Part shown: positions 42,344 through 42,378 of the stretch, piece after piece
How the letters are laid out: each line of letters starts with the position of its first letter
Numbering within the stretch: the first letter of the stretch is position 1
Source: Octopus sinensis
Lineage: Eukaryota
Assembly (NCBI RefSeq): GCF_006345805.1
Contig: NC_043018.1
Coordinates: 9,052,001-9,116,000 of the forward strand
Reading direction: 5' to 3'
DNA length: 64,000 bases
Position numbers and translations under genes: made by a program
The notes under the pieces: model-generated
What the model was told of the DNA's origin: nothing
What the model saw: the letters and a program-made list of their open reading frames with translations, nothing else
Database searches by the model: none

Positions 42344-42378
42344 GTTTAACGTTTCGAGCGGAGCTCTTCGTCAGAAAC
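42344..42378 (-). ncRNA. Minimal type-I hammerhead ribozyme motif (intact core) in a Penelope-like repeat remnant (about 42255-42430)
   Basis: Minus strand GUUU-CUGACGA-A-GAGC(UCC)GCUC-GAAAC-GUU-AAAC: stem I GUUU/AAAC, stem II GAGC/GCUC, palindromic stem III AACGUU, GUU triplet. Confidence 0.8.

What the first reader, a model, noticed from the sequence alone, without database searches (positions are those of the whole stretch)
42344..42378. Intact minimal hammerhead ribozyme sense to SOCS, 1.2 kb past the stop codon
Seen: all core nucleotides, stems I and II, and self-complementary stem III (AACGUU), with predicted cleavage between 42348 and 42347. On reading I found no minus-strand AATAAA between the SOCS stop and this motif, only ATTAAA at 43174-43179. 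Established: such minimal type-I motifs occur in Penelope-like repeats and cleave best as dimers; hammerheads in 3' UTRs can cut mRNA. Inference: the motif lies in a long 3' UTR or termination zone and could destabilise or terminate the transcript of a JAK/STAT feedback inhibitor, possibly concentration-dependently via dimerisation.
Basis: partly seen in the sequence, partly recalled or inferred. Interest (0 to 1): 0.8.

Follow-up and report, generated by a model that had tools for sequence, protein, structure and literature searches.

The report
Retroelement-type minimal hammerhead near octopus SOCS2
A complete minimal hammerhead ribozyme motif does sit 1.2 kb downstream of an octopus SOCS2-like gene, but it looks like the leftover of a Penelope-type retroelement insertion that is missing from a sister species and is unlikely to cut the SOCS2 transcript.

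Summary
On the minus strand, 42378..42344 reads GUUU-CUGACGA-A-GAGC(UCC)GCUC-GAA-ACGU-U|AAAC, with every hammerhead core base present and cleavage predicted after U42348. The window is Octopus sinensis chromosome CM016880.1. The motif is sense to a SOCS2-like gene and lies 1,193 nt past its stop codon.

It carries three traits published for minimal hammerheads of Penelope-like elements (PLEs): an unpaired base between A9 and G10.1, a G10.1-C11.1 pair, and a palindromic ACGU in place of helix III. Chance predicts about 0.015 hits per window with a loose descriptor and about 2e-5 with those traits.

The motif sits in a ~176-nt CpG-rich block that abuts a (TA)18 microsatellite. At the orthologous O. 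bimaculoides site, whose flanks are about 86% identical, nothing alignable to the block or the motif is present.

The motif is solitary. No partner copy lies within 39 kb. The predicted monomer fold pairs the core with the cleavage site, leaving about 0.1% of molecules hammerhead-competent. The ACGU/AACGUU dimer helix has a predicted Kd of 0.1-60 mM. Published single minimal hammerheads showed no cleavage in vitro.

Verdict: an ordinary new member of a known class, most likely an inert retroelement relic. Regulation of SOCS2 is unsupported. Whether the motif is transcribed could not be tested.

The parts
42344..42378 (-). Minimal type-I hammerhead motif: GUUU / CUGACGA / bulged A / GAGC-UCC-GCUC / GAA / ACGU / U17 | AAAC. 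Predicted cleavage between 42348 and 42347.
   Evidence: Read directly. It is the only strict descriptor hit in the window. Chance expectation is 0.014-0.016 per window with a loose descriptor and 2e-5 with the PLE traits.
42255..42430 (-). A ~176-nt block carrying the hammerhead, with about 52 nt upstream and 89 nt downstream of the motif. It has no alignable counterpart at the O. bimaculoides orthologous site. Probable retroelement insertion. The boundaries are good to a few bases only.
   Evidence: flanks align, block does not; no second copy in the window, L002 or L003; 12 CpG, o/e 1.42, GC 44%, against a window o/e of 0.53 and GC of 37%.
42219..42254 (.). (TA)18 microsatellite directly abutting the 3' end of the block. 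Probable insertion target.
   Evidence: TRF. O. bimaculoides has (TA)n directly after the conserved flank. (TA)n is a published preferred target of several PLE clades (PMC8557442).
42435..42700 (-). Segment just upstream of the block that is unusually well conserved between the two octopuses (93-96% against an ~86% background). Possibly the distal 3' UTR or poly(A) region of SOCS2; it contains AATAAG and ATTAAG variants.
   Evidence: The functional reading is inference.
43174..43179 (-). ATTAAA, the only strong poly(A) hexamer between the stop codon and the motif. It is conserved in O. bimaculoides.
43571..44437 (-). SOCS2-like coding sequence (288 codons plus stop). It gives the context and orientation of the finding.
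2892..2937 (-). Second PLE-type minimal hammerhead in the window: GACAC CUGAUGA A GGCUG..CAGCC GAA ACGC U GUGUU. It has the same bulged A, the G10.1-C11.1 pair and GAAACG, but C replaces U16.1. It lies in the tail of a SINE-like unit. It shows that such elements populate this genome.
3270..3310 (+). Degenerate mirror copy of the second hammerhead (G10.1 to T, G12 to A), in the other arm of the head-to-head inverted pair 2900-3118 / 3123-3307.

Best explanation
The motif is a genuine minimal hammerhead of the type carried by Penelope-like retroelements and by the non-autonomous elements that depend on them (retrozyme-like or SINE-like).

It arrived as part of a ~176-nt fragment that integrated at the edge of a (TA)n microsatellite about 1.1 kb downstream of the SOCS2-like stop codon. 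The insertion probably happened in the O. sinensis lineage after its split from O. bimaculoides. The fragment is either a severely 5'-truncated 3' end or a solo unit.

In its native setting the ribozyme works in multimeric element transcripts. Two neighbouring copies pair through the palindromic ACGU and form a double hammerhead. Each then cuts after H17, leaving 5'-OH and 2',3'-cyclic phosphate ends on unit-length RNA, which is circularised and reverse-transcribed.

At this locus the copy is alone and has a 4-bp AU-rich helix I. It is predicted to misfold, with the core paired to the cleavage site. It is therefore most likely a catalytically silent passenger with no designed role in SOCS2 expression.

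Shown here: the motif, its family traits, its solitary state, its lack of an alignable counterpart in the ortholog, the adjacent (TA)n, and the folding energetics. Inferred: the PLE origin of the block, the direction of the event (gain rather than loss), and inactivity in vivo.
For: 1. Three of the four traits that Cervera & de la Pena list as arising independently of their search descriptor are present: a base between positions 9 and 10.1, G10.1-C11.1, and palindromic 15.2-16.2. A 4-5 bp helix I is also typical.
2. Chance expectation with these traits is 2e-5 per window.
3. A second motif with the same traits lies in this window, inside an inverted pair of repeat units. Inverted partial copies and opposite-strand hammerhead pairs are described for PLEs.
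4. A pattern scan of metagenome contigs returned two motifs with the same helix II and helix III. The unconstrained helix I is complementary in both: GUCC/GGAC (4 bp, two compensatory changes relative to GUUU/AAAC) and GCA/UGC. The same scan found none in 596 Gb of prokaryotic genomes and none in viral contigs.
5. Nothing alignable to the block is present in O. bimaculoides between well-aligned flanks. There the flank runs straight into (GT)(TA)n in all three local copies of that flank.
6. The block abuts (TA)18, and (TA)n is a known PLE target.
7. The block is compositionally distinct, with CpG o/e 1.42.
8. Energetics and published in vitro data argue against activity of a lone copy.
Against: - No other copy of the 176-nt block could be found. 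The only octopus DNA within reach was this window and 20 kb from each of two relatives, and a six-frame peptide search found nothing. Membership of a repeat family is therefore not demonstrated.
- No PLE reverse transcriptase or GIY-YIG ORF is present in the window.
- Helix II is 4 bp, not the 6-8 bp usual for metazoan PLE minimal hammerheads.
- The flanks of the metagenome relatives share nothing with the block.
- O. bimaculoides has its own rearrangement at the site, so loss there cannot be excluded.
- High CpG o/e also characterises the neighbouring SOCS2 region at 0.92-1.09, so this trait is not specific to the block.
Confidence: 0.75

Rival explanations
1. The hammerhead lies in a long SOCS2 3' UTR or in the post-poly(A) termination zone. 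It cleaves the nascent or mature transcript, possibly after dimerising in trans, and so tunes a JAK/STAT feedback inhibitor.
For: - The motif is complete and sense to the gene.
- No canonical AATAAA precedes it.
- The 265 nt just upstream are unusually conserved, which fits a UTR reaching to about 42435.
- CpG o/e stays high from the CDS through the block and drops after it.
- From my own knowledge, a 3' UTR hammerhead that lowers expression is known in rodent Clec2 genes.
Against: - Nothing alignable to the motif is present at the orthologous site of O. bimaculoides.
- There is no cis partner.
- The monomer is predicted to be about 99.9% in folds that are not hammerhead-competent.
- The trans-dimer Kd is 0.13-63 mM.
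- Single minimal motifs were inactive in vitro, and dimers were weak even at non-physiological Mg2+.
- A conserved ATTAAA at 43179 could end the mRNA about 800 nt before the motif.
- From my own knowledge, not checked here: hammerhead cleavage leaves a 5'-OH, a poor substrate for the 5'-3' exonuclease that drives termination.
Confidence: 0.05
2. Chance. The 35-nt motif is a fortuitous match in unique intergenic sequence and never belonged to a ribozyme-bearing element.
For: - A loose descriptor is expected to hit about 660 times by chance in a 2.7-Gb genome.
- No second copy of the block was found.
- Rfam models give no hit.
- Helix I and helix II are at the minimum length.
Against: - With the three literature-defined traits the expectation falls to 2e-5 per window and 0.86 per genome.
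- A second motif with the same traits lies in the same 64 kb.
- The two metagenome relatives have a complementary helix I.
- The motif sits in a block with no alignable counterpart in the ortholog, next to a typical PLE target.
Confidence: 0.05
3. Ancestral element, lost in O. bimaculoides. The block predates the split of the two octopuses and was deleted in O. bimaculoides during the microsatellite-centred duplication and inversion seen there. It could then be an older, possibly retained, feature of the locus.
For: O. bimaculoides shows a complex local rearrangement exactly at this position, with 65-85-nt direct and inverted duplications of the flank. No outgroup was available, because the Argonauta locus aligns only in the CDS.
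Against: - All three O. bimaculoides copies of the flank run directly into (GT)(TA)n, as expected for an empty site that was later duplicated.
- The block has an undecayed CpG content and an intact core, which fits a young insertion.
Confidence: 0.15

Closest known systems
Minimal hammerheads (min-HHR) of metazoan Penelope-like elements (Cervera & de la Pena 2014, PMC4209133)
   Same: - Type-I topology
- Full catalytic core
- 4-bp helix I
- Unpaired base between A9 and G10.1
- G10.1-C11.1 pair
- No true helix III, but a palindromic ACGU that implies a dimeric active form
- Mostly found as solitary dispersed copies
- Sits next to a (TA)n target
   Different: - Helix II is 4 bp with a 3-nt loop, not the 6-8 bp described.
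- No pLTR, RT or GIY-YIG ORF lies nearby.
- Family membership by sequence was not shown.
Metazoan non-LTR retrozymes (Cervera & de la Pena 2020, PMC7229834; bioRxiv 10.64898/2026.07.22.740005)
   Same: - Small units of 170-400 nt
- Low-GC host context
- One type-I hammerhead per unit
- Proposed dependence on PLE machinery
- Monomeric genomic copies exist
   Different: - Retrozymes are defined by tandem repeats, usually with canonical hammerheads that have loop-loop contacts.
- Here there is one copy, no tandem partner, no terminal redundancy and a minimal ribozyme.
Schistosoma Sm-alpha SINE-like elements with hammerheads (named from my own knowledge; cited within PMC4209133)
   Same: A short interspersed element combining a pol III-type head with a hammerhead. 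The unit at window 2892-3310 has this layout.
   Different: - The focal block at 42255-42430 has no tRNA-like head.
- Sm-alpha hammerheads are canonical and active.
- The octopus SINE-like copies are mutated in the core.
Discontinuous hammerhead in rodent Clec2 3' UTRs (Martick et al. 2008, cited in PMC4209133)
   Same: A hammerhead sense to, and downstream of, a protein-coding ORF.
   Different: - From my own knowledge, the Clec2 ribozyme has long stable helices, is active as a single molecule and is conserved among orthologs.
- The octopus motif is minimal and dimer-dependent, has no alignable counterpart in the ortholog examined, and its presence in the mRNA is unknown.
Newt satellite 2 and axolotl hammerheads that act as double hammerheads (PMC7229834)
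   Same: A short helix III with a palindromic loop. Activity depends on pairing of two copies.
   Different: Those occur in long tandem arrays, which supply the partner in cis. This copy is solitary.

Membership tests
Hammerhead ribozyme (any type) | Conserved core C3 U4 G5 A6 N7 G8 A9 / G12 A13 A14 / A15.1-U16.1 / H17 in the right order around three helices | tested here: met
   Read from the sequence and matched by the descriptor.
Hammerhead ribozyme (any type) | Match to the curated covariance models (Rfam hammerhead families) | tested here: not met
   No hit at gathering score or at E<=10. The second PLE-type motif in the window is missed as well, so the models appear insensitive to minimal variants.
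Hammerhead ribozyme (any type) | Site-specific self-cleavage giving 5'-OH and 2',3'-cyclic phosphate | not testable with these tools
   This needs in vitro transcription or RNA end mapping.
PLE-type minimal hammerhead | Type-I topology with a short (4-5 bp) open helix I | tested here: met
   GUUU/AAAC, 4 bp, then mismatches. Definition.
PLE-type minimal hammerhead | Unpaired nucleotide between A9 and G10.1 | tested here: met
   A42367. Definition.
PLE-type minimal hammerhead | G10.1-C11.1 closing pair of helix II | tested here: met
   G42366 pairs with C42356.
PLE-type minimal hammerhead | Palindromic 15.2-16.2 / loop 3, with no stable helix III within one molecule | tested here: met
   ACGU at 42352-42349.
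PLE-type minimal hammerhead | Longer than usual helix II (6-8 bp) | tested here: not met
   GAGC/GCUC is 4 bp with a 3-nt loop. The paper describes this as a frequent trait, not a requirement.
PLE-type minimal hammerhead | Belongs to a genomic consensus family with covariation, some members lying in the pLTRs of a PLE with an RT/GIY-YIG ORF | tested here: inconclusive
   No further copy in the 64-kb window or in 40 kb of relatives. No PLE ORF in the window. Two metagenome motifs with a covarying helix I. The octopus genome itself could not be searched.
Metazoan non-LTR retrozyme | Head-to-tail tandem repeats of 150-450 bp, each with a type-I hammerhead | tested here: not met
   Single copy only, with no terminal redundancy in the block.
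Regulatory 3' UTR hammerhead (Clec2-like) | Located within the mature mRNA | not testable with these tools
   No transcript contigs are on record for this gene. Poly(A) signals are ambiguous.
Regulatory 3' UTR hammerhead (Clec2-like) | Conserved at the orthologous position in related species | tested here: not met
   Nothing alignable to it in O. bimaculoides between flanks that align at about 86%.
Regulatory 3' UTR hammerhead (Clec2-like) | Stable active fold as a single molecule | tested here: not met
   The hammerhead-competent fold is 3.9 kcal/mol above the MFE, about 0.1% of the ensemble. This is a prediction, not a measurement.

The most novel reading that the evidence does not exclude
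The solitary minimal hammerhead has been co-opted. The SOCS2 transcript reads through to about 42340, and the motif is activated in trans by abundant PLE or retrozyme RNAs that carry the same ACGU palindrome. It might also be activated by a chaperone. Bursts of retroelement expression would then cleave the extended SOCS2 transcript and couple transposon activity to JAK/STAT feedback in O. sinensis.
Probability: 0.03. Interest if true: 0.7.

Novelty: new member of a known kind. Interest (0 to 1): 0.2.

Why it matters
If the motif cut the SOCS2 transcript, it would be a rare case of a ribozyme regulating an immune-signalling gene in an invertebrate. The evidence points the other way. It is one more of the thousands of minimal hammerheads that Penelope-type retroelements scatter through animal genomes.

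Its practical value is modest:
- I found no paper describing hammerheads in octopus (literature search), so this documents such motifs in a cephalopod genome, in two forms: a solitary block and the tail of a SINE-like unit.
- It gives a dated-looking presence/absence contrast between two Octopus species at a (TA)n site.
- It shows that Rfam models miss this class.

Tried and rejected
1. Rfam at gathering score and at E<=10: only microsatellite-driven miRNA look-alikes, no hammerhead.
2. BLASTN and nhmmer of the 176-nt block against the window plus the O. bimaculoides and Argonauta loci: no second copy. An earlier BLAST of a wider region returned only microsatellite noise.
3. Concatenated six-frame peptides of the block against 5.8 billion proteins, hoping to catch ORFs called on other genomic copies: nothing. 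This approach has low power.
4. Exact-product look-ups of the genomic SOCS2 ORF (288 and 305 aa) to find transcript contigs that would show the 3' end: not on record.
5. Terminal redundancy of the block, as expected for a longer-than-unit copy of a circular RNA: alignment score no better than shuffles. Rejected.
6. Extended homology between the block and the flanks of the metagenome hammerheads or the SINE-like tail: none beyond the ribozyme.
7. Other CTGANGA...GAAA candidates in the window (27621-27579, 57786-57755, and the plus-strand hits): they fail the helix requirements even with relaxed settings. Treated as chance.
8. Search for PLE ORFs in the window with a GIY-YIG/YxDD motif grep and inspection of six-frame segments: only RTE-like non-LTR RT and mariner-like fragments.
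9. Origin of metagenome contigs L004 and L005: no Pfam or PDB match for their ORFs. My guess that one ORF was a dynein fragment was not confirmed.
10. Supplementary files of the two key papers are not held.
11. ARAGORN finds no tRNA in the window. The 'tRNA-like head' of the SINE-like unit therefore rests only on resemblance to A and B boxes.
12. A first shuffle simulation timed out and was replaced by a conditional simulation.

Full report
**What is there.** The minus strand of window 42378..42344 reads GTTTCTGACGAAGAGCTCCGCTCGAAACGTTAAAC. It parses as a type-I hammerhead:
- helix I GUUU/AAAC (4 bp)
- core CUGACGA
- one unpaired A
- helix II GAGC/GCUC closed by UCC
- G12 A13 A14
- A15.1-C-G-U16.1
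- U17, followed by the 3' strand of helix I

Two refinements apply. There is an extra A between A9 and G10.1. Only ACGU occupies helix III positions, and an A-U pair closing a 2-nt loop cannot form within one molecule. The motif can therefore be active only if two copies pair through the palindrome.

**Where it is.** The window is 100% identical over 20,867 nt to Octopus sinensis chromosome CM016880.1. ORF 43571..44488(-) has an SH2 domain (E=1.7e-13) and a weak SOCS box (E=1e-3). It equals the NCBI protein 'suppressor of cytokine signaling 2-like' except for 11 residues of a poly-Thr tract. The motif is sense to this gene and starts 1,193 nt after its stop codon. On that strand there is no AATAAA before the motif, an ATTAAA lies at 43179-43174, and the first AATAAA is at 40333.

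**Is it more than chance?** A structural descriptor was applied with these settings: helix I and helix II of at least 4 bp, G-U pairs allowed, an optional bulge, 0-8 nt inside helix III, U16.1, and H17.
- It finds this motif as the only hit in 64 kb on both strands.
- The chance expectation is 0.014 per window by conditional Markov simulation and 0.016 analytically. That is about 660 per 2.7-Gb genome, so the loose motif alone is not compelling genome-wide.
- Cervera & de la Pena (PMC4209133) list traits of Penelope-like-element (PLE) minimal hammerheads that emerged independently of their descriptor. These are a base between 9 and 10.1, a conserved G10.1-C11.1, and palindromic 15.2-16.2.
- All three traits are present here, together with the 4-5 bp helix I they describe. 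Requiring them lowers the expectation to 2e-5 per window, or 0.86 per genome.
- Rfam hammerhead models give nothing. They also miss the second PLE-type motif described below, so that miss carries little weight.

**Relatives.** When U16.1 is not required, the descriptor finds one more motif, at 2937..2892(-): GACAC CUGAUGA A GGCUG(8 nt)CAGCC GAA ACGC U GUGUU. It has the same bulged A, G10.1-C11.1 and GAAACG, and a 5-bp helix I, but C at 16.1.
- It lies in one arm of a head-to-head inverted pair (2900-3118 / 3123-3307).
- Each arm is a unit made of a head with A-box-like and B-box-like sequences, an (AAT)n run, and a tail of about 90 nt that carries the hammerhead.
- The other arm's hammerhead, 3270-3310(+), is degenerate.
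- Opposite-strand pairs of minimal hammerheads and inverted partial copies are described for PLE insertions.

A scan of JGI metagenome contigs with CTGANGANGAGCNNNGCTCGAAACGT returned two loci.
- Both have the bulged A, and in both the unconstrained helix I is complementary. L004 has GUCC/GGAC, with two compensatory changes relative to GUUU/AAAC. L005 has GCA/UGC.
- The same pattern has no match in 596 Gb of prokaryotic genomes or in IMG/VR.
- The flanks of these motifs share nothing with the octopus block. This fits the extreme flank variability reported for this class.

**The block that carries it.** O. bimaculoides aligns with the window at about 86% from 45297 to 42435 and again from 42254 onward. 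Window 42434-42255 has no counterpart.
- In O. bimaculoides the conserved flank (...GATTTTGAAAGAGTGT) runs straight into (TA)n. That flank has been duplicated there twice in direct and once in inverted orientation, each time followed by the microsatellite.
- In O. sinensis the ~176-nt block lies between the flank and (TA)18.
- The block has 12 CpG (o/e 1.42, GC 44%) against a window mean o/e of 0.53. The neighbouring SOCS2 region is also CpG-rich at 0.92-1.09.
- (TA)n is a published preferred target of several PLE clades, and PLE hammerheads lie near element 3' ends (PMC8557442).
- The most economical reading is a short retroelement fragment inserted at the microsatellite edge in the O. sinensis lineage. 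Loss in O. bimaculoides during its local rearrangement is not excluded, because no outgroup was available. Argonauta aligns only in the CDS.

**Would it work here?**
- No second copy or partner exists in the window. The only other hammerhead-like sequences are 39 kb away and of a different sequence family.
- ViennaRNA predicts that the 35-mer pairs U4-G8 (UGACG) with C15.2-A1.1 (CGUUA) at -7.7 kcal/mol. The same pairing appears when 60 nt of context are added on each side. The fold with helices I and II and a free core is -3.8 kcal/mol, about 0.1% of the ensemble.
- The intermolecular helix is worth -1.7 kcal/mol (ACGU), -3.5 (AACGUU) or -5.5 (with dangling ends). These correspond to Kd values of 63 mM, 3.4 mM and 0.13 mM. 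By inference these are far above plausible mRNA concentrations, so concentration-dependent dimerisation of a single-copy mRNA is implausible.
- Experimentally, a single S. mansoni minimal hammerhead showed no detectable cleavage, and dimeric or trimeric constructs cleaved weakly, mostly at non-physiological Mg2+ (PMC4209133).

**Is it in the transcript?** This could not be settled.
- The ATTAAA at 43179 is conserved in O. bimaculoides, but so is the sequence beyond it.
- The 265 nt just upstream of the block (42700-42435) are 93-96% identical between the species, against an ~86% background. This could mean the 3' UTR extends that far, with AATAAG/ATTAAG variants near 42550-42510.
- No transcript-derived contig for this gene exists in the collections I could query.

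**Verdict.** That class is known to occur in thousands of mostly solitary copies in metazoan genomes. Its lack of an alignable counterpart in the ortholog, its solitary state, its weak helices, its predicted misfolding and the published inactivity of single motifs all argue that it is an inert insertion relic, not a regulator of SOCS2.

It counts as a new member of a known kind, and interest is low. The residual novel reading is trans-activation by abundant retroelement RNAs acting on a read-through SOCS2 transcript. I rate that at about 3%.

Noticed in passing
window 2892-3310: Head-to-head inverted pair of a SINE-like unit. Each unit has an A/B-box-like head (3123-3195 on +, 3118-3046 on -), an (AAT)n run, and a ~90-nt tail carrying a PLE-type minimal hammerhead. 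The minus copy is intact except for U16.1 to C; the plus copy is degenerate. Homology between the two tails stops at GAAAC, 3-4 nt before the predicted cleavage site. ARAGORN and Rfam do not call the head a tRNA. It resembles the Schistosoma Sm-alpha layout.
   Followed up: partly
L002 (O. bimaculoides) 11960-12190: At the site where O. sinensis has the hammerhead block, O. bimaculoides has two direct copies and one inverted copy of the 65-85-nt upstream flank, each followed by (TA)n. The inverted arms are 85 nt long, 89% complementary and 59 nt apart. The cause is unknown; microsatellite hairpin-driven template switching or the scar of an insertion are both possible.
   Followed up: partly
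window 42435-42700: This segment is 93-96% identical between O. sinensis and O. bimaculoides against an ~86% background. It ends exactly where the block or microsatellite begins. It may be the distal 3' UTR or poly(A) region of SOCS2, or another conserved non-coding element.
   Followed up: partly
window 41500-44437: CpG observed/expected is 1.09 in the SOCS2 CDS, 0.92 in the 1.1 kb downstream and 1.42 in the block. It then drops to 0.23 at 41500-42200; the window mean is 0.53. This may mark the edge of an unmethylated domain or of the transcription unit.
   Followed up: no
window 44228-44260: The NCBI O. sinensis SOCS2-like protein (277 aa) lacks 11 residues of the poly-Thr tract that the genomic ORF encodes (288 aa). 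This is either an annotated 33-nt micro-intron or a length difference in a (TAG)n-type repeat.
   Followed up: partly
L004 699-998: In the metagenome contig Ga0114949_10056392, the near-identical minimal hammerhead (822-788, minus strand) lies in the 133-nt spacer between ~84-nt inverted arms that are 85-91% complementary. It directly abuts one arm.
   Followed up: partly
window 2500-2671 and at least 9 other places (e.g. 19342-19515, 30743-30913, 31321-31492, 34281-34453, 37111-37282, 45565-45732): A ~170-nt interspersed repeat at 84-90% identity, probably an octopus SINE. One copy lies about 1.1 kb upstream of the SOCS2 start codon.
   Followed up: no
window near 16910(-), 23054(+), 29456(+), 47520(+): Fragments of RTE-like non-LTR reverse transcriptase (YADDLALIAxS and YRPISLTS motifs) and a mariner-like transposase fragment. 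No PLE-type RT or GIY-YIG ORF occurs anywhere in the window.
   Followed up: no
window 4000-6900 and 10000-11600: Kilobase-scale TA/CA-rich microsatellite tracts with GC as low as 13-18% in 2-kb windows. They generate long spurious ORFs rich in Tyr, Ile, Cys and Met.
   Followed up: no
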